The notes under the pieces are model-generated. The model saw only the letters and a program-made list of their open reading frames with translations. It did not search any database and was not told where the DNA came from. Position numbers and translations under genes: made by a program. From NCBI GenBank assembly GCA_907165135.1, contig OU015568.1, forward strand, positions 16,007,208-16,071,207: DNA of 64,000 bases. Direction: 5' to 3'. This DNA comes from Oikopleura dioica. Lineage: Eukaryota; Animalia; Chordata. Within the stretch, counting starts at the first letter, position 1. Each line of letters begins with the position of its first letter. This document shows, piece by piece, positions 3,000 to 64,000 of the stretch.

Positions 3000-3454
3000 G
3001 CAGACTCCACTTCGCTTTTCTGTGTTTTTACTGTTTCCAGTATTGTAATACAGTCGTTCGGGATCAAGCGCAGTTATCATTCTGAACATTCAAAATGTAA
3101 CACGTGATGGAGAACATATTTCACAATGAGGTCTCGTTCAAAAAGATAAACCTGTCTTAACTGTAACCATGGTACACTTTCTTTGTTTTTATAGTTGATA
3201 TCAGGTTCTGATATCGAAAATCAAAATGGCTGTTGTGAGAAATAATAGATAGACTTTGAGCTATGAAAGTTTTTTTTATAATTCAAAAGTGAACAGAGGA
3301 TGGGCAGCTCAAACGACTCAAATGTTCTCCTTCGTAACACATGTATCCAGTCGTTTCAGAGATAGGAACATTTTTTTCAATCAGAAGATATAGGCGAGGA
3401 TCGAAATCAATTGATGCTATTTTTTTAAATAACTTATAAGAAATTGGCTTCTTG

Positions 3455-6303
3455 TTATTGACTCAGTTGTGGATAAGTTGCGTCGCCCTTGTTTAATACG
3501 ACCTCTTTTATTGCCGTGACGAGTTCCAAAAAGTCTTTCCGCGAGCTTTGAGTGTTCTAAAATAAGATAAAGATGTGTTTTTGAAGAAGATAAAATACCT
3601 GAAGAGTTTGGAAAAGATCTCTAAATTTAACGGTATTAAACTGCTCCGTGAGTCCAATACTTTCAGGCGCCTGTCCTGTCAGTCTCGTAAATTCAGCTAT
3701 TGTTATATGAGGATGAGCGACGAAGAATCGTTGGCAAATATCGCTATCTGAAGGTGCCAGTACGCCTCCTTGCTCTTGGCTGCTTTGTCTGAACATTTCT
3801 TTGACCTCGCGCTCGCCGCGACGCTTTTTCTTGCTCCACATCTCGTGGCAGTCTTGGTGCTTCGGCAGATTGGGAGGGACGACCTTGGTCTTGTCGAATC
3901 CGGTCAGCCAACCGTGCTTGAGCGAGTCGGCCGTTGAAATTCGTTTTTTAGGATCGAGCGTTAACATCTCGTCCAAAAGGTCTGAATCATCGGTTAAAAA
4001 TTGTTTACATTGAAACGAGCCATACTTAAGGCTAGTTGTGGAATCATCGTGTACTCCTCCCTCAGGCGTCTCCTGTAGTTCTTCTTGGGCTTTATAGTAT
4101 GAAAAAATCTAAGATCGATGACTTCTGGCCACGTCATTGGATTTGGCGTTCCGCAGACGCGAGCAATAGCTTCCAGCTGAAGTGACTCTCTGTCCGCTTG
4201 AAACAGAGGCTTTTTCGTAAAGAGCTCTCCCAACACGCATCCACAGGACCAGACATCGACGGCGGGTGTATAGCGCTCTTCTCCGAGAAGAAGTTCAGGT
4301 GCACGATACCATAACGTGATGACTCTTTTTAAAAAGTTTTAGCCGAGAAAAAGAATATGGGCTCGAACCTGTTGGTGTAACGCCTTTGGTCTCTCGGGTC
4401 CATGAAACGAGCAAGACCGAAATCGGCGAGCTTTATTTCACCCTTGTTGTTTAACAGAATATTTGAACACTTGATGTCGCGATGCAGGAAATTATTGTTG
4501 TGGCAGTAGCTTAGGGCATCAAGCAATTGAAACATAAAAAGCTTCACGTGTTCTTCTGTTAAATCGACCAATCCAGAGTCAAGAACGCCCATCAAGTCGT
4601 GGTCCATGTAATCAAAGACGAGATAGAACGCGCCCTATGATGAATCGTTGGCTTATGAAGAAAGAAACTCGACTTTACCTTCCACTTTCTATAATCAGCA
4701 GCATCAAGCTTGTCAGTAACGATCTCTCGAAGTTTAATAATATTTTCATGATTGTCCAATTGGCGCAAGATTTTAATTTCACGAACTGTTGTCACTGGGA
4801 AGCCTTCTTTCTCCTTCTCCAGACGGACTTTTTTCAGCGCATAGATCTGGTTTGATCGTTTGTCTTTCGCTTTGTAAACCATGCCAAAAGTTCCTTCGCC
4901 GATAATGTCCATGATCTTGAGTTCGACTTTAGTAAAGGAACAGATAGAAACGCTACCTCATAGTTTTCAACGAATAAACTTCCCCAGTCTTGCACATTGG
5001 CGACTTGATGCCATCGTTTGCCGCACAATCTCGGCTTGCGGATTTCTGGAACTGGCGCCACAACGGGCGTTGATGGAGCAGTCGTAGGCGCTTTGGGTAG
5101 GGGTAAATCGTGCACTAGAGAGATCGGCCCTTTCGCGAGCGATTTCCTCCTTTCGTTTGGTTTCGGCAGTTTTTGGTCGACATTATTTTGCGCTTCGCTG
5201 GAAAGTCGTGGAGTCGGCAAAGCTGGGCTAGAAAAAGGTTCAAGATTGAGTTAGTTTTGCGAAACTTACGTTTCTTCAGTTGTGTCTGGATTATACTCTG
5301 GGATCTCGGCAGCAATTTGATATTCGACAGAATCATTTTTATTTACACCGTCCGACTCTGGAATATCATTCTGCAAACTCGCTTTGGACTTGTCATTACT
5401 TGCACCGTTCTCTTCAGACTGACCATTTTCGGAAACTTTTCCATTTTTGACCGTTTCCTGAGAAGATTCCTCCTGGGATGACTTTGTGATAGGTTTGTCC
5501 TGAGAATCAAGCTGTTTTTCTAGGAGATCGTCAACTTCGGTCTCTTGTTCTGCTCTATTGGCGTCTAGTTCGTCATCCGACTGGCTGTCTCTTGAACGGC
5601 GCTTTTCTTTTTTATGTTTTTTCTTCTTTTCTTTTTTCTCCTTTTTCTTTTTATCTTTCTTCTTTTTCTTTTTCCGCTCTCGGTCTGAGAAATCGTCGGA
5701 GTCCGATAGTTCTCTTCTTAGCTGTCTCCGGAATTCATCTGCCTTTGATTTGTCTTAAAAACTGTTAGACATTGTTTTGTCGAAGGTAATTTTACTTGAA
5801 TGATTGAATTGATCGTGAATGGAGTCATATCGACGAGGAGAAGAAGATCTTCTCTTCTTCTTGCGTCGAGGAGGGGAGCGAGAACGCGAGTGCGATCCTC
5901 TGCGTTCTAGAACTACACCAGACCTTCGATGACGCGACCTATCGTCGTAGCCGCGCTCATCTTCCCGATAGCGGTCGTCATCGCGATACCGTCGATCTCT
6001 ACTCAATTTGTTTATTTTTCTGCTTTACGAAAGCCTCAACCTTGATCGGCGCCTGTCTCTGCTTCTGTCCCGATCTCGATGATCCCGATCGTCATCGTCA
6101 ATGACCCTCGTCAGAAGCGGTTTCTTCCTTGCCGACGAGGGGCTTTTCGGAACCTCCCGCCTTATTGAAACTACGCGCCTGTCTGAGCTCCCCTTTCTCG
6201 TGCGCTGAAAGAAATTGTACTGTGTACATTACTCTGCAGTGATTACAGTGATAACTACCCGCTGCGGCGAAGAGTCGGAGTCAGAGTATGGAACGGGACC
6301 CAT
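3455..6303 (-). CDS. CDK12: Cyclin-dependent kinase 12/13 with N-terminal RS-rich region (multi-exon)
   Basis: [55 protein letters not shown] and the C-terminal [17 protein letters not shown] extension typical of CDK12/13; RS/RD-rich N-terminus. CDK12 versus CDK13 is not resolved; start and stop exons are inferred. Confidence 0.88.
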
Positions 6304-57959: not shown

Positions 57960-58563
57960 ATGTCGGAGACTACTGAAAATGTCGATCAAGCAAGTGACAT
58001 CTGCGACAATCCAGCTTGCCAAAGAGAACTTGCCGATTACAAGAAGAAATTCTACGAGGAGCCAAATTACGAAAAGCTGATTTACGGATTCAGCAAGATG
58101 GAAGATATCATTTCTTACATTACGCAAGTTCGAAAATAATTAGATCGCTAATCATTATGAAAGTATTGAGTTTTTTTCGAACTTTTAAAAGTCGCCTTCA
58201 AGAACGAAACAAGGAAATTCAGCAAAAGACGGAGCTTTTCAAGAGCATCGCGGACGACAGAATCGCAGATCTGAAAGAAATGCTCTCCGAGGCAGAAGAA
58301 GAACGAGCGGCGAGAAAACGCCAGTATAAGAAAAGAATCGAAGGCCTCGAGTTAATGCTTCAAGGAAAAGTCGGCGAGGCTAGGAAGATCAGAAACTCCC
58401 TCGACAAAGGAAGAGCTTGAACATTTTACTATGAATATTTATTGATTACCATCAATCGTTTTGCAGCTCCTCTCTAGAAAAGAAAGAAAAACAGGAGGCA
58501 AAGAAAGTCCCCAAGAAGGCTGAGCGCGTCTCCTCCCGAATCAACAAAAACCAAACTGCTTAG
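57960..58563 (+). CDS. Orphan coiled-coil protein B (paralog of A); last junction uncertain
   Basis: TTTCAG-CAA-ATG start; MSETTENVDQASDICDNPACQRE..., then ...ERAARKRQYKKRIEGLELML. Confidence 0.6.
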
Positions 58564-58685
58564 ACGCTGTTTTACCCAATGCCCTCATTTACTGCCTGGC
58601 ACAGTTAACTAATAAAGTTCAAAAAGAAGATTTCAGCGAAAAATATTTATGTGACAACATGTGCATTTCTGTATTTTCAAACAGG

Positions 58686-60601
58686 CTAGGTACAGACGCC
58701 GTATGTTACATTTCTTTTCCGCACGTCCCAGGATATCGGTTCGTCCTTGTTCCACGAGAACTTCATATTATGCTTGAACTTTTCGACTATCTGCACTTCT
58801 TTGAAATTATTGTTGCAGCAGATCGCGGTACACTAGGACTGACATCGAAATCTAACCCCTCAAAATGAAGACTACCTTTCCGAGATTCTTTTTTCGTTGA
58901 TTTCTTCTATATCTGCCCTTTTTATGGCGTGATTTTTTCTTTGAAGATTTTTCAATTGTCGTTCTTTTTGAGGTTTTCTTCTTGTCCCTTGGAAGCTTGC
59001 AGAGTCTTCCGCGGTTTTGATTGAGTAATGATACAGAACTAGCGCCTCCATTAGCCGAACTGAAACTTTTTCTCGCGGAAATTCTTGATTGTCCTCTTAC
59101 CAGATGTCTAACGGCAACATGTAGACAAGTATCCTGTCGGGTATACTTTTGATATCTGGCTGGGGCCCATTCATGTTCACGGTTATTTTCTGTAGTGAAG
59201 GTTTTTCTTTGTATTTGGAGTAGAGATTTGATGCTATTTTGCTGAAGTCTTCTATGCTTTTTACACAATATTTCCACGTACAGCTCCCTGACGGACCCAT
59301 ACATCTGCAGCTTTCGCGTCTGAAAGTTGGTCTAACCTGAAGTCATGAGGATTTAAACTTGCCTTGATCTGAAGACAAGTCGTTCGCCAACTTTTTGATT
59401 TTTGCGAGCGAGAGTATAGTCGAGTGAAGAATCAGTCCTTATTTGGAATGCTTCTGCTCGTTGCTTCGCGTATTCCACGCATTTATCGATACAGTTTGTC
59501 GAAGCCACTGTATCTTCGTGGATGTAAAAGTCCTAATAAAATTTGTGAAGTCGAGATAAAGTTTAAGCTATTGAATCACTCAAGGGTACACCTCCCCCTC
59601 GTTCAAGCCTCGTTATTTCTAGTATTTACTAACTGACACGGATAGTAAATCAGCGTCAGATTCCAACACTACGGAAGGTCACCTCCTGTAAATATCGTAA
59701 ATCGCGAATTTCTAATAACGCCATTGATTTATTTCGGGGCGAATTCCGGTTGGAATCATGGAGGACTGCTCAATCATAAAGCATTACCACGTACCTTATA
59801 ATAGTTTTTTGATGTTTTTCTTTGGCATCCATGAACGACGTTGATTTGTCCTTTGATGCAAGCTTTTGTTATTTCATAAGTGATTCCTGCTGCAATCATT
59901 GCATTAGCAAACGCGGTTTCTGGATAACCTAAAATGAAATTGTAAGAAACCGAAGTTTTCTATTAACGCGACATTTCCGGATAGATAGCGTAAGCCGGAA
60001 GTGTTTCCTTGTATTTGACGGAAACGATGGCATAGAAAAGTTACTCTATTCATCGCACAATGAACAAGTTGTGAGTTTAGCAGTGATTATAGAATCAAAT
60101 GGGACAAAGGACATTCCCGCTGGTCTGGTCACCGACCGAAAACTCACTCTTTGACATGATTGAAGTCCAGTCGTGGTTTTTCAGCGTCTTCTGCGCTTGC
60201 TCGATAAGCCCAGTACAGTTCCATGTGTTTTTGATAAGCAGCCTTTTACACTCTTCCTCGGCTCTTCTCAATCCGATCAGGGAGTACTTGAACGCCGCTG
60301 GATGGTGGAAGCAGTCCTGGCGTTGAGCATTTGTCAGTTTGTCGAGCTCCTGCTGATGATAGCAAATCTCCTTTTCAATCGTCCTCGACATTTTTTGTCC
60401 GACAACTGATGTGACCATCAGCGTCAAAAGTAATCGCCAGATTGTAATTCTGAAAAGACAGATCGAAAAAATTTTGACCTCGAAGACATAATCCGGACGG
60501 TCGTGGGGAGCATTACTGTTACTGACTGTCAGAATCGGATTAACTTGCAATAGCAGTTTTTCACATAATGAACTAACGATTGACTGGGGCCATGCTTTCA
60601 C
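58686..60601 (-). CDS. WNT: Highly divergent Wnt ligand; start codon uncertain
   Basis: EECKRLLIKNTWNCT, ETAFANAMIAAGITYEITKAC, C...VEYA...F, NQKVGERLV, CRCMGPSGSCTWKYC...FSKIASNLYSKY, DIC...GRLC and CTAICC: all Wnt landmarks, in order. Subfamily not assignable by eye. Confidence 0.88.
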
Positions 60602-60981
60602 TTTAAGGAATCAATGAAATTGTCAAACAAACGCTTTGTCACATTTTGATACGCATGTTTAATAGTAGGGATAGTTCTTATTGTCAGTTTCCACAATCAG
60701 AGTTGGCCACTCTCTGTTGACTCTCTGTCTCTCATCACGCTTTTTGCCATCATTTCGCTTAGCATGACATGAGAAAAGTATTTGCTAATGATGAAAACCG
60801 ATGGATAAAAACAATTATCTTGATAGAACGGAAGCTTCTTTAGGAAGAATCCATTGATGATAACTGAAGTGACTCCCATGGATCCAGAAGATCACAGTCG
60901 TCAGAACAAGACCTATCTTAGTGGAGCCGGTTTATCACAGTAAAATAAAAATGAAAGACAAAAAAGAAATAGTTGATATCA

Positions 60982-61155
60982 TAACCCTAACCCATTGGTA
61001 GTAGGTTTTCATTCGAGCTGCCCTTAACCCTAAACCTAACCAAGGGGGTTACGCCCCCGGGATCCCCCACCTAAGGCCTAAGGCAGGGGGCTTCGCCCCC
61101 CGGAACCCCCGTTAAGAGTTCCAACTTGGAACTTCCAAGTCCCTAACCCTAACCA
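60982..61155. repeat. Interstitial element with telomere-like CCCTAA units and GC hairpins
   Basis: aaccctaaccc, cttaaccctaaacctaacc and ccctaaccctaacc flank GGGGG-ttacg-CCCCC, GGGGG-cttcg-CCCCC and agttccaa-c-ttggaact. Confidence 0.6.
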
Positions 61156-63202
61156 CTAGCCCAGATTCTAGAGATTTTGGATGGCTCGAATCATAGGCTC
61201 GAATGACAACCCCTCTCTACGGTCGATATTTGTGATGGATCGAGTTCAAGTCAAGCGAGGGCATGTTCAATGCACTACCCGTCCATATGCTGCCTATAAG
61301 AGGATAAGCATACAGTGACAAAGTCTACCTATCTCTTTCGGCAAAATAGAGAGATATTCTCCCCTAAAGCATGTCATCGACCCGCAAAGGGCAATAACCG
61401 GAGTTTTCATTGATAAACGCGCCGTTTTGTTAGAAATCGTCTCCCATGAAACGCTTATTGCAATTTTCAGTTTTGTCTTTTTTTGTTCAGCTGCAGACAC
61501 TTTCAACTTGCCCTTTTTGGAATTCTGGGAGAATGGAAAGCAATAAATCTGAGTGATTTCAAATAGCAAAAGTTATCGTTTTAACGTTGTCGTTGAGCAA
61601 GCCAAGAAAGACTTCCATATGACATATTTGCCAGCTGCTTTCAGTTATGCACTTCAAAATGACTAGCGAATCTACTTCCCATATTCCATAGAAAAATGAG
61701 AAAACAACGAAAAATTCAATTAACAAAGTGTTTTCTCGCTGTTTTTCATCAATAAATTTCTCCACGAAAATACGGTACTTGTCCGGGCGAAAAAATAAGC
61801 GCCTTTTATGATGGGAAAAAAGCGATATTCAAGGGAAACCGGAACCACTCCTTCCCGCCTGGAATTTGCCTTTTTATTCACATAAATGTACCTCGGACTG
61901 ATTCTTCTGTTGGACTTCAGTATCATCTGTGTGGCTCTTTCTTGACATTCATCCCTCTGCTATTCTCGACCTGTTTATCAAATGTTCTGAGTTGAAGTAC
62001 TTTCAGATTCTCTCGTCCTGAAAAATCTTGTTTAAACTCAGCGACCAGGAGCGAAAGTGAAAAAAAAAGAGTAAAAACGCGTTTCATCAAGACTAGAGCT
62101 CTCTTTGATGTGGCGCTCTAGGGCGGCGCTAGTAATTGTAATACAATTCATACTGATGCTCAAAAATCTGGTCAAGTTCTGGTCGATACTGATAATGGCT
62201 CCTCCAGGTTGTATAAAAACCACACGGATTCGAAATAACTTTTTAAGGAGAGCGTACTTCTCTGTTTTACCGGATTACCTTCAAATGTCAGAACGAGCTT
62301 CGCAGTCCCTCGTTCCTAAAAATCACTGTTGACATGTCCTTGAGCTCAAGCTCTGAGCATTCGCGCAGGTGGATGTGGCTGACATCTGAGTAGTTTATGG
62401 CGATCAGCTGGCGAAGGCGATGTCAATTTTGAGCAAGAGTCAATATGCATCTCTTGTTCCGGCTGTATACCGTTCCGTGGCGCCGGATGCATGACAAGTT
62501 TACTGCTTTATTTCTCAATCTCTCTTAACTAACCAACTCTCCAAGAACTATATGGCCAGTTTTGATGAATCATCAAGTACGAGTTTCTCGATCTCGAAGA
62601 TCAAAGAAAGTGATTGTTGAGTGGACGGCTAATGATTTAAACGATTGCAATTAAAATCTTGAATTTCAATTTTTATCCACTCATCGAGTTATTAGACAAC
62701 CAGAGTCCATTTCCTACGACTTTGACGTCAACAAGTTTTCGCCTCTAATAAGACACTGATTTCCCCCTGGAGCCGGAAATAGCAGAATTCAGATCAGAAA
62801 TAGAATTTGAAATATGGATCCCAGACACTAATGATTCGTTAATTTTCCTCTGCGATCAAGTAAATATTATGGCACTGAGCGCGCTTAATTCATATTTTTG
62901 CACCTGCTTCGGTGGTAATAATTGCTTCAGCGGTTAATGCCAAGCTGAGAAGCATAAAACTATCCTAATTACTCTTCCTTTGCCGACCCTGAGCCCGGTT
63001 TCCTGACAAAATGAGTCCAGTTCTACAAACTAAATTTATTGATTTTGAACAGATATCGGTATTTTGCTTTTGAACTACAGGAAGATGAAGAAATGTACAG
63101 ACGATCGCTCTACTGGCAGATTGTTGGCCAAAGCGCGGCCCGCGGTGGTGGCGTGCGTGATCAAATGCGCTGATCACGACTTTTTCATCATAAAAAGGCT
63201 GA

Positions 63203-64000
63203 TTATTGCTGGCCAAGGTTGCTGAAGAGGTCAGAACGGGCCGAGCTTTCGCGAGTTTTGAGCTGAAATACGAGTTATTTACCCCTTTCTCTGAGAAGGT
63301 TATTTACCTTATCAAAGGACTCAATTTTGTTGACAATTGAGTCGATTCTTGAAGCAATTTTAGAAACATGATGCTCGAGTCGATCGACACGACGGGAGAG
63401 AATCGTGAATTCATCGTTGGAGACAAACATCTAACGATTTTTAATAATATGCTTTCAGTTGTCAATTACCTTGTTAAGTTTTTCAAGCATCAGCTCGTTG
63501 GCAAGTGGATTCGAATCGGATGCGAATCCATGATTTTCTGGCTGGTGCATGTCGAAGCCAAGAGCTTCTCCAACTTCTTGTCGATCCTTGTTTCCGGGTT
63601 CAAAGGAGCGTTCAAAGAGCGAGAGTAATCTCAAGTGATCCACTTTTTGAACCGCGATCCTTAACATCATCGATCTCGTCGTTGATCTCCGCTGTCTGCT
63701 TGAGTAGGTCAGCGCGGAGCCTGTTTCGTTCCTCTTTGTTAAGAACCATGTCCCCATCTTTGTCATATTTGGCAAAGACTGCTTCAATCTCAGCGTCGGG
63801 CACGCCCCGAAGTTTAAGGTCAGAGCGCCACTCATCCCAGTCGACTTGATCATCATTGTTCGTGTCAGCTGAGTCCAGGGCATCTTGAATGTCCTTTTTT
63901 GAATGTTAAAAAAATGATGGATCAGTTTTATTAATTCATTTTTAAAACACGGGCCTTGAGTCGGTCTTTGCGAAGTTTGAGTTTTGTGAGCATGCCATTG
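63203..64000 (-). CDS. PKD2: Polycystin-2 family channel, C-terminal cytoplasmic region (partial; 5' part outside the window)
   Basis: LTKLKLRK, GVPDAEIEAVFAKYDKDGDMVL (EF-hand) and FVSNDEFTILSRRVDRLEHHVSKIASRIDSIVNKIE (PKD2 coiled coil). PKD2 versus PKD2L1 not resolved. Confidence 0.88.

What the first reader, a model, noticed from the sequence alone, without database searches (positions are those of the whole stretch)
58686..58832. Wnt that has lost all six index-finger cysteines
Seen: last exon CTAICCNNNFKEVQIVEKFKHNMKFSWNKDEPISWDVRKRNVTYGVCT*. The canonical C-x-C-x-F-x-W-C-C-x-V-x-C-x-x-C becomes H-N-M-K-F-S-W-N-K..., keeping F-x-W. The cysteines that staple the base of the domain (DIC, GRLC, CTAICC, final C) remain. 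Known: this hairpin is Frizzled contact site 2 and holds three disulfides, so the loss is of complete pairs. Inference: a selected remodelling rather than decay, giving a ligand with altered receptor use or a decoy/antagonist.
Basis: partly seen in the sequence, partly recalled or inferred. Interest (0 to 1): 0.76.

Follow-up and report, generated by a model that had tools for sequence, protein, structure and literature searches.

The report
Oikopleura Wnt10 lacks index-finger disulfides
This is the last exon of the published Wnt10 gene of the tunicate Oikopleura dioica, an expressed and conserved Wnt signal protein that has replaced all three disulfide bridges of its receptor-gripping "index finger" with ordinary residues, which apparently nobody has remarked on.

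Summary
Window 58832-58686 (minus strand) is the terminal exon of a 7-exon Wnt gene. All splice phases fit, and the model is identical to the database protein P0007 (O. dioica Okinawa, g13007).

The published riboprobe primers identify the gene as Odi_Wnt10 of Marti-Solans et al. 2021. The reverse primer sits on this exon's stop codon.

The protein has 18 cysteines instead of 22-24. The six hairpin cysteines are replaced by H, M, N, K, I/L and D/E. The three disulfides at the base of the C-terminal domain, the thumb and its acylated serine, and the F-x-W tip all remain.

This is not decay:
- Five sequence clusters of O. dioica orthologs share the cysteine-free hairpin.
- Four intronless mRNA contigs end in this exon.
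- RNA-seq reads cross the E5/E6 junction.
- Synonymous sites are saturated against Okinawa, while the hairpin is 89% identical, against 73% for the whole protein.

A second derived feature is a 35-41-residue polybasic insertion beside the hairpin.

Whether the protein is an altered ligand or an antagonist remains untested. The gene is known; I found no description of the cysteine loss. An unchecked scan note (s1-400474) reports a similar loss in another Wnt elsewhere in this genome.

The parts
61923..61952 (-). 9-codon upstream ORF whose stop overlaps the main start codon (..AGATGA)
   Evidence: Read from the sequence. The same overlapping arrangement is present in the cDNA contigs L001-L004 and L007.
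61892..61926 (-). Exon 0: start codon and first 11 codons (MILKSNRRISP), the N-terminal part of the signal peptide; GT donor at 61891
   Evidence: A metatranscriptome contig in run X1 (99+% identical) joins this exon to 60449. It equals residues 1-11 of P0007.
60450..61891 (-). Intron 0, 1442 bases (GT..AG), containing short telomere-like runs
60148..60449 (-). Exon 1: hydrophobic core of the signal peptide and start of the Wnt domain (C41, C58, C79, C90; NCT sequon)
   Evidence: Pfam wnt match 22.3 bits for this exon alone; residues 13-112 of P0007.
59795..59928 (-). Exon 2 (ETAF..AAG helix, C136, C147)
   Evidence: Pfam wnt match 25.3 bits.
59363..59532 (-). Exon 3 (C171 and C175 in place of the W-G-G-C-S-D-N motif), followed by a GC-AG intron of 43 bases
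   Evidence: Reads with a loose end at 59321 fit the E3/E4 junction, but the loose sequence is also contiguous exon 3 in genomic DNA, so it is not junction-specific.
59101..59319 (-). Exon 4: thumb C-R-C-M-G-P-S-G-S-C (59309-59280) with the acyl-acceptor serine S224, the linker, and C287 (split codon)
   Evidence: Pfam wnt match 36.4 bits; alignment to Wnt7a and Wnt5a; motif located.
58876..59059 (-). Exon 5: G-R-L-C307, then a 41-residue polybasic insertion (58998-58876; 21 K/R) in a loop that is 9 residues long in Wnt5a
   Evidence: it is basic and carries R-x-[KR]-R motifs in all orthologs.
58686..58832 (-). Exon 6, the finding: C349, C353, C354, the cysteine-free hairpin (residues 364-396, 58787-58689), C395, and the stop codon at 58688-58686
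   Evidence: Spliced E5/E6 reads in runs X5 and X6. The published Wnt10 reverse primer matches 58686-58709 with 1 mismatch.
58655..58685 (-). Short 3' UTR; the poly(A) site is inferred by homology
   Evidence: cDNA contig L002 ends in a poly(A) run about 30 bases after the stop, after the same GCACATGTTG that the window has.

Best explanation
The exon is the true 3' end of Odi_Wnt10, a functional Wnt gene of Oikopleura dioica.

Before the O. dioica cryptic species split, its C-terminal 'index finger' lost all three hairpin disulfides as complete pairs. It kept the three disulfides that staple the base of the domain. The finger has since been maintained by purifying selection as a cysteine-free beta-hairpin. 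The residues at the former Cys positions are fixed: H369, M371, N376, K377, I/L381 and D/E384. The F373-x-W375 tip that contacts the Frizzled CRD in canonical Wnts is invariant.

Inferred: alternating hydrophobic and aromatic residues on both strands (F367, H369, M371 facing I381, W383, V385) and the invariant P380 replace the disulfide ladder and the vicinal-disulfide turn.

Because the thumb and its acyl-acceptor serine are 99% conserved, the protein is most likely still secreted through Porcupine and Wntless as a lipidated ligand. It would grip a CRD with the thumb and a softer, remodelled finger, with changed affinity or specificity. The neighbouring polybasic insertion probably adds proteoglycan or matrix binding, or a convertase cleavage site.

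Shown here: gene model, identity, expression, splicing, conservation and cysteine pattern. Inferred: fold of the hairpin, lipidation, secretion and receptor binding.
For: - **Gene model.** Exon phases are consistent, and every exon piece is found in order in P0007.
- **Identity.** The Wnt10 riboprobe primers match the Bergen locus L005 with 0 mismatches and the window stop region with 1 mismatch. They encode MSKETKNE and VTYGVCT-stop.
- **Family.** Pfam wnt E = 1.4e-32. Solved Wnt7a and Wnt5a match at E = 1.7e-16 and 4e-14, with H369 and M371 on the C-x-C.
- **Expression.** Intronless contigs L001-L004 carry the full ORF and end in this exon. L002 has a poly(A) tail about 30 bases after the stop.
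- **Splicing.** 17 reads in X5 and 6 in X6 have loose ends at 58820 reading ..KQHLGK|CDSI... That 30-mer is absent from Bergen genomic loci, where a 41-base intron separates the two halves. The X1 contig joins exon 0 to exon 1.
- **Published expression.** In situ patterns for Odi_Wnt10 are muscle pair 5, caudal ganglion and gut.
- **Conservation.** All orthologs have 18 Cys and the same Cys-free hairpin. The hairpin is 89% identical between Okinawa and the others, against 73% overall and 99% for the thumb.
- **Selection.** For exon 6, pN is 0.105-0.114 and pS is 0.57-0.61. Over the whole gene, pN is about 0.15 and pS about 0.73, which is saturated. Omega is 0.15-0.21 between L001 and L002/L003.
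- **Tip residues.** F331 and W333 of Wnt3a are the key site-2 residues.
Against: - No structure supports the hairpin model. AlphaFold2 with the six-ortholog alignment failed (mean pLDDT 36).
- Without cysteine anchors, the alignment after W375 is uncertain.
- The position aligned to Wnt3a V337 is acidic or polar (E/D/Q). V337R kills Wnt3a signalling without reducing binding, which favours the antagonist rival.
- C335A abolishes Wnt3a reporter activity in cells, so a finger without the vicinal disulfide may not signal canonically.
- Omega for the last 48 codons among the closer lineages (0.27-0.41) is higher than for the rest of the gene in two of three pairs, based on few sites.
- Lipidation, secretion and receptor binding were not tested.
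Confidence: 0.6

Rival explanations
1. Natural Wnt-derived antagonist or decoy. The protein binds Frizzled through the intact lipid thumb, and perhaps through the F-x-W tip, but cannot form a signalling-competent complex. It therefore competes with Odi_Wnt5, Wnt11 and Wnt16. This resembles engineered dominant-negative Wnts, in a species that lacks Dkk, WIF and Cerberus.
For: - C-terminally truncated Wnts that lack the index finger act as dominant negatives in vivo.
- Wnt3a V337R binds the Fz8 CRD but does not signal, and the aligned position here is E/D/Q.
- The published survey lists Dickkopf, WIF and Cerberus as absent in O. dioica, with a single sFRP.
- Expression is restricted and tissue-specific.
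Against: - The finger is not deleted. It is kept at full length and is the second most conserved part of the protein, including the tip residues. A decoy that needs only the thumb would not require this.
- No functional data exist.
- Zebrafish assays tolerated the F331A, W333A and C335A mutations of Wnt3a, so finger changes need not abolish signalling in vivo.
Confidence: 0.2
2. The remodelled finger and the polybasic loop have switched partner. The C-terminal domain would now bind something other than a Frizzled CRD (a proteoglycan, a Ror- or Ryk-type receptor, or a matrix component), so the protein acts as a short-range or non-Frizzled cue.
For: - The insertion has 17-21 K/R in 35-41 residues and is conserved as basic in all orthologs.
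- A new invariant N-V-T sequon lies on the distal strand of the hairpin.
- The canonical contact geometry should change without the vicinal disulfide turn.
Against: Retention of exactly the F-x-W residues that contact the CRD groove is most simply explained by continued CRD binding. No partner is known.
Confidence: 0.15
3. Artefact or decay: either the exon is mis-modelled and a different Cys-containing terminal exon is used, or the gene is a degenerating pseudogene.
For: - The exon alone matches no Wnt.
- O. dioica is prone to gene loss.
Against: - Four full-length mRNA contigs and spliced reads use this exon.
- Poly(A) follows about 30 bases after the stop.
- A convergent plus-strand reading frame appears to end near 58565 (read by eye, not followed up), which would leave little room for another exon.
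- A six-frame scan finds no canonical Wnt C-terminal motif in the window except one chance F-S-W-C-C 11 kb away.
- The ORF is intact in every lineage found, with pN far below pS.
Confidence: 0.02

Closest known systems
Canonical Wnt ligands (Pfam PF00110), in particular the Wnt10 subfamily to which Marti-Solans et al. 2021 assign this gene
   Same: - The Wnt domain is well above threshold.
- It has an N-terminal signal-like sequence.
- The thumb C-x-C-x-G-x-S-G-S-C with the acyl-acceptor serine is present.
- The N-C-T sequon after W-N-C is present.
- The three base disulfides of the C-terminal domain remain.
- The F-x-W tip remains.
   Different: - It has 18 rather than 22-24 cysteines.
- None of the six hairpin cysteines remain.
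- A 35-41-residue polybasic insertion replaces a loop that is 9 residues long in Wnt5a.
- In the N-terminal domain, the C-G-C is reduced to one Cys and a new Cys (C175) lies four residues after C171, so a disulfide there has probably been rewired.
Engineered dominant-negative Wnts (dnXwnt8, dnWnt11b): C-terminal truncations lacking the index finger
   Same: They keep an intact N-terminal domain and thumb and lack a canonical finger. This precedent shows that such proteins can be secreted and can interfere with signalling.
   Different: Here the finger is not deleted. It is kept at full length, cysteine-free, and strongly conserved. This protein is natural and under selection.
Wnt3a site-2 point mutants (F331A, W333A, C335A, V337R)
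   Same: They perturb the same loop. C335A breaks the vicinal disulfide that is absent here, and V337R corresponds to the charged residue aligned here.
   Different: Single unpaired-Cys mutants leave a free thiol. Odi_Wnt10 has removed complete pairs and fixed compensating residues.
Drosophila WntD (from memory: an atypical Wnt that lacks the lipid modification)
   Same: It is another natural Wnt that has given up one of the two canonical Frizzled-gripping devices.
   Different: It is the mirror image: WntD gave up the thumb lipid, while Odi_Wnt10 keeps the thumb and has rebuilt the finger. This comparison was not tested here; only the N-terminal domain of WntD appears among the solved structures.

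Membership tests
Wnt family (PF00110) | Wnt domain above Pfam's gathering score | tested here: met
   113.9 bits against a cut-off of 20.3, E = 1.4e-32, profile positions 2-286 of 305. Exons 1, 2 and 4 each pass on their own.
Wnt family (PF00110) | Thumb hairpin C-x-C-x-G-x-S-G-S-C with the palmitoleoylated serine | tested here: met
   C218-R-C220-M-G-P-S224-G-S-C227, aligned to C-K-C-H-G-V-S-G-S-C of Wnt7a and Wnt5a. It is 99% conserved among orthologs. Acylation itself was not tested.
Wnt family (PF00110) | Conserved pattern of 22-24 cysteines | tested here: not met
   18 Cys in all orthologs counted (P0002, P0004-P0007, P0009). The pattern is stated.
Wnt family (PF00110) | Disulfide-stapled index-finger hairpin (C-x-C-x-F-x-W-C-C-x-V-x-C-x-x-C) | tested here: not met
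   The positions hold H369, M371, N376, K377, I/L381 and D/E384. The last 19 Pfam profile positions are unmatched.
Wnt family (PF00110) | Hydrophobic F-x-W tip of site 2 | tested here: met
   F373 and W375 are invariant. They are aligned to K-F-H-W of Wnt5a and Wnt7a.
Wnt family (PF00110) | Secretory signal peptide | tested here: inconclusive
   Exons 0 and 1 encode a basic stretch followed by the hydrophobic run W-R-L-L-L-T-L-M-V-T-S-V-V-G. No signal-peptide predictor was available.
Wnt10 subfamily | Placement inside the Wnt10 clade in a family-wide phylogeny | not tested
   Taken from Marti-Solans et al. 2021. No reference Wnt sequences could be fetched here. The best solved-structure matches are Wnt7a and Wnt5a, but Wnt10 is not among the solved structures matched.
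Dominant-negative or antagonist Wnt | Binds receptor but blocks signalling by other Wnts | not testable with these tools
   Needs a reporter assay or an in vivo assay.

The most novel reading that the evidence does not exclude
Odi_Wnt10 is a naturally evolved Wnt-derived antagonist or partial agonist. It keeps the lipid thumb and a disulfide-free, F-x-W-tipped finger to occupy Frizzled CRDs without productive signalling. It is tethered near its source by a polybasic loop. It would compensate for the absence of Dkk, WIF and Cerberus in O. dioica.
Probability: 0.18. Interest if true: 0.8.

Novelty: new variant of a known kind. Interest (0 to 1): 0.55.

Why it matters
The 22-24-cysteine pattern, and the disulfide-laced index finger in particular, is treated as a hallmark of Wnt proteins. 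In the Wnt3a mutagenesis read here, C335A, which breaks the finger's vicinal disulfide, abolished reporter activity in cells.

Here a chordate has removed all three finger disulfides from an expressed Wnt and kept the result under purifying selection, while retaining the tip residues. This is a natural experiment on three questions:
- what the finger disulfides are for;
- how much of site 2 is needed for receptor recognition;
- whether Wnt ligands can evolve into modulators.

It also corrects the 5' end of the published and annotated Bergen model, which lacks the signal-peptide exon.

Tried and rejected
- **AlphaFold2.** The run with the six-ortholog alignment gave an unusable model (mean pLDDT 36.2, pTM 0.30), so no fold search was run. 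The ESM Atlas's own model of P0007 (pTM 0.66) matches a Wnt cluster at TM 0.65, but I could not inspect it.
- **Word-indexed protein searches.** Searches with P0002 and with the ortholog profile found only the five O. dioica clusters. This limit comes from the need for shared 5-residue words and is not evidence of absence.
- **Full HMMER search.** Exon 4 as query found only two orthologous sequences and one fragment.
- **Metagenome scan.** It returned only contigs of the O. dioica complex (L007-L009), so the loss could not be dated beyond that complex.
- **Exons searched alone.** Exon 6 alone against solved structures gave no Wnt hit. Exons 3, 5 and 6 alone gave no Pfam hit.
- **Start codon.** My first guess, an ATG at 60489 with a 29-base intron, was replaced by the upstream exon shown by RNA.
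- **Apparent 119-base joint.** The joint at 60265/60385 in the reads has TC..CC ends. I take it as an alignment effect of divergent reads and not as an intron.
- **Papers not held.** Janda 2012 and MacDonald 2014 were not available. The full disulfide map of Wnt3a and the tolerance of paired Cys removal are therefore from memory.
- **Joined model.** The joined spliced model was never typed or searched. I searched the exons one by one by reference, then used the database's own record P0007 by id after showing that it contains every exon piece in order.

Full report
**Observation**

A three-frame reading of 60760-58650 gives a coherent set of exons on the minus strand:

| Exon | Coordinates |
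|---|---|
| E1 | 60449-60148 |
| E2 | 59928-59795 |
| E3 | 59532-59363 |
| E4 | 59319-59101 |
| E5 | 59059-58876 |
| E6 | 58832-58686 |

- The codon phases match across every junction.
- The introns measure 219, 262, 43, 41 and 43 bases. All are GT-AG except a GC-AG intron after E3.
- RNA evidence added an upstream exon, E0 (61926-61892), which carries the start codon and is joined to 60449 across a 1442-base intron.

**How the spliced model was handled**

I searched the exons one by one by reference.

- Exons 1, 2 and 4 each pass the Pfam wnt threshold. Exons 3, 5 and 6 match nothing on their own.
- A full HMMER search with exon 4 returned a 395-residue ortholog, P0002.
- A word search with P0002 returned the database's own record for this locus, P0007 (CAG5091365.1, Oidioi OKI2018_I69 PAR g13007, 396 aa).
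- Every exon piece is found in P0007 in order, and the three split codons account for the remaining residues. From there I used P0007 by id.

**Identity**

The genome is Oikopleura dioica, Okinawa. An earlier scan note said so and the name of P0007 confirms it.

Marti-Solans et al. 2021 (PMC8220140) describe eight O. dioica Wnt sequences: Wnt5, Wnt10, Wnt16 and five Wnt11 sequences (Wnt11a-d plus a possible Wnt11c duplicate).

- Their Wnt10 riboprobe primers encode MSKETKNE and VTYGVCT-stop.
- The primers match the Bergen genomic locus L005 at 4001-4024 and 5713-5736 with no mismatch. The reverse primer matches the window at 58686-58709 with one mismatch.

The gene is therefore Odi_Wnt10. [quoted passage not shown]

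The paper reports Odi_Wnt10 expression in muscle cell pair 5, the caudal ganglion, a posterior cell, and parts of the stomach, intestine and anus. The word 'cysteine' does not occur in its main text. A library search for Oikopleura, Wnt10 and cysteine found nothing relevant.

**What is changed**

P0007 matches Pfam wnt at 1.4e-32, but only over profile positions 2-286 of 305.

Alignments to solved Wnt5a and Wnt7a place the residues as follows:
- L-G-K-C349-x-x-x-C353-C354 lies on the canonical C-x-x-x-C-C.
- H369 and M371 lie on the C-x-C.
- K-F373-S-W375 lies on K-F-H-W.

By spacing, N376 and K377 replace the vicinal Cys pair, and I/L381 and D/E384 replace the last two hairpin cysteines.

The protein has 18 cysteines. 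Those at the base remain: C287 (D-I-C), C307 (G-R-L-C), C349, C353, C354 and C395.

From my memory of the Wnt3a disulfide map, the base bonds are 281-312, 297-307 and 311-351, and the finger bonds are 327-342, 329-339 and 334-335. On that map the losses are three complete pairs. A held paper confirms the 334-335 bond and defines site 2 as C329-V337, with F331 and W333 critical. Other held papers state that the finger is a roughly 40-residue hairpin with many disulfides.

The thumb C-R-C-M-G-P-S224-G-S-C is intact.

I saw two further derived features.
- **Polybasic insertion.** The loop between C307 and C349 is 35-41 residues long with 17-21 K/R, against 9 residues in Wnt5a. It has R-x-[KR]-R motifs in every ortholog.
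- **N-terminal domain cysteines.** The C-G-C is reduced to one Cys, and a new C175 follows C171. This keeps the count even and suggests a rewired bond.

A new invariant N-V-T sequon lies on the distal strand of the hairpin.

**Expression and splicing**

- **Full-length mRNA contigs.** Four short intronless contigs carry complete ORFs that end in this exon: L001 from a JGI metatranscriptome, and L002, L003 and L004 from Logan assemblies of public runs. They represent three protein variants. L002 ends in a poly(A) run about 30 bases after the stop.
- **RNA-seq runs X5-X7.** Their reads are under 90-95% identical to the window and lie mostly on the exons, with sparse depth in some intron bins (for example 59572-59779). 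Most of their loose-end sequences match the Bergen genomic loci exactly, so the runs come from the North-Atlantic type.
- **E5/E6 junction.** The loose end at 58820 (17 reads in X5, 6 in X6) reads ..KQHLGK|CDSI... That 30-mer is absent from Bergen genomic DNA, where a 41-base intron separates the halves. These are true junction reads.
- **Okinawa-type evidence.** The X1 marine metatranscriptome contig (99+% identical) crosses the E0/E1 junction.

Direct RNA evidence for the E5/E6 junction in the Okinawa lineage itself was not obtained. There it rests on the annotated model and on homology.

No canonical Wnt C-terminal motif exists elsewhere in the window, apart from one chance F-S-W-C-C 11 kb away. 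A convergent plus-strand reading frame appears to end near 58565 (read by eye, not followed up).

**Conservation**

The orthologs P0002, P0004/P0009, P0005, P0006/P0008 and P0007 all have 18 Cys and the same cysteine-free hairpin.

| Region (Okinawa vs the others) | Amino-acid identity |
|---|---|
| Whole protein | 73% |
| Linker | 51% |
| Thumb | 99% |
| Hairpin (residues 364-396) | 89% |

The residues at the former Cys positions are invariant or conservative.

Nei-Gojobori counts were done exon by exon for the window.
- Whole gene: pS 0.72-0.74 (saturated) and pN about 0.15.
- Exon 6: pS 0.57-0.61 and pN 0.105-0.114.
- Among the closer lineages, omega is 0.15-0.21 for L001 against L002 or L003, and 0.27-0.34 for the last 48 codons, on few sites.
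- L002 against L003 gives omega 0.77 at dS 0.067.

The loss therefore predates the split of the O. dioica cryptic species and has been maintained since. A metagenome scan found only members of the O. dioica complex, so the event cannot be dated further back.

**Mechanism**

The best reading is a still-functional, lipidated ligand whose finger is now a disulfide-free hairpin. Alternating hydrophobic residues (F367, H369, M371, F373 and W375 on one strand; I381, W383 and V385 on the other) and the invariant P380 could replace the disulfide ladder and the vicinal-disulfide turn. This is inference from the sequence pattern; AlphaFold2 with the shallow alignment failed.

The main rival is a natural antagonist, for three reasons:
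- Truncated Wnts without a finger are dominant negatives.
- Wnt3a V337R binds but does not signal, and the aligned residue here is acidic or polar.
- O. dioica is reported to lack Dkk, WIF and Cerberus.

Against this rival, the finger is retained and strongly constrained.

A third reading is a switch of partner, driven by the polybasic loop and the new sequon.

Decay or mis-modelling is excluded.

**Comparison and novelty**

By Pfam score, thumb, base disulfides and tip, the protein is a member of the Wnt family. It fails two features usually listed as defining: the cysteine count and the disulfide-stapled finger.

The Wnt10 assignment is taken from the literature and was not retested.

The gene is known. 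I found no published mention of the finger remodelling, the polybasic insertion or the missing signal-peptide exon of the Bergen model. I class it as a new variant of a known kind.

An unchecked scan note (s1-400474) reports another O. dioica Wnt that has lost its finger cysteines. If that is true, the phenomenon is broader in this species.

Noticed in passing
window 61952-61923 (minus); L001-L004 and L007 5' UTRs: A 9-codon upstream ORF whose stop overlaps the main start codon (..AGATGA) is conserved in position and length in all cDNA contigs. This suggests translational control of Odi_Wnt10.
   Followed up: partly
window 61926-61892; L005 about 3050-3079: The annotated Bergen protein (P0006, 374 aa) and the published forward primer start at an internal Met (residue 32). 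The real start, with the signal peptide, lies in an upstream exon that is present in the cDNA contigs and in the Bergen genomic locus.
   Followed up: yes
window 59362-59320 (minus): Intron 3 is a 43-base GC-AG intron (donor GCAAGT).
   Followed up: partly
window about 60990-61190, inside intron 0: Short telomere-like GGTTAGGG runs and G+C-rich palindromic stretches, possibly a small inserted element. I left this region out of the reads stretch on purpose.
   Followed up: no
window about 62000-64000 (minus); L005 1-1602: The upstream neighbour reads like the EF-hand tail of a polycystin/PKD-type channel. The Bergen locus has a PKD_channel gene in the same position, so synteny appears conserved on that side. 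The downstream neighbours differ.
   Followed up: no
L002 versus L003 (whole CDS): Two closely related lineages (dS 0.067) differ by about 47 non-synonymous changes against 15 synonymous ones (omega 0.77). This points to a burst of protein change or relaxed constraint outside the hairpin.
   Followed up: partly
window about 47294 (minus): An isolated F-S-W-C-C string in an open frame 11 kb from the gene. It has no other Wnt features and I take it as chance.
   Followed up: partly
window 58460-58620 (plus): A plus-strand reading frame appears to end near 58565, with an AATAAA near 58612. If it is a convergent gene, the two 3' ends lie about 100 bases apart or less.
   Followed up: no
window 58998-58876 (minus); all orthologs: The polybasic insertion carries furin-type R-x-[KR]-R motifs inside a loop closed by the C307-C349 pair. 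Cleavage there would leave a two-chain, disulfide-linked Wnt.
   Followed up: partly
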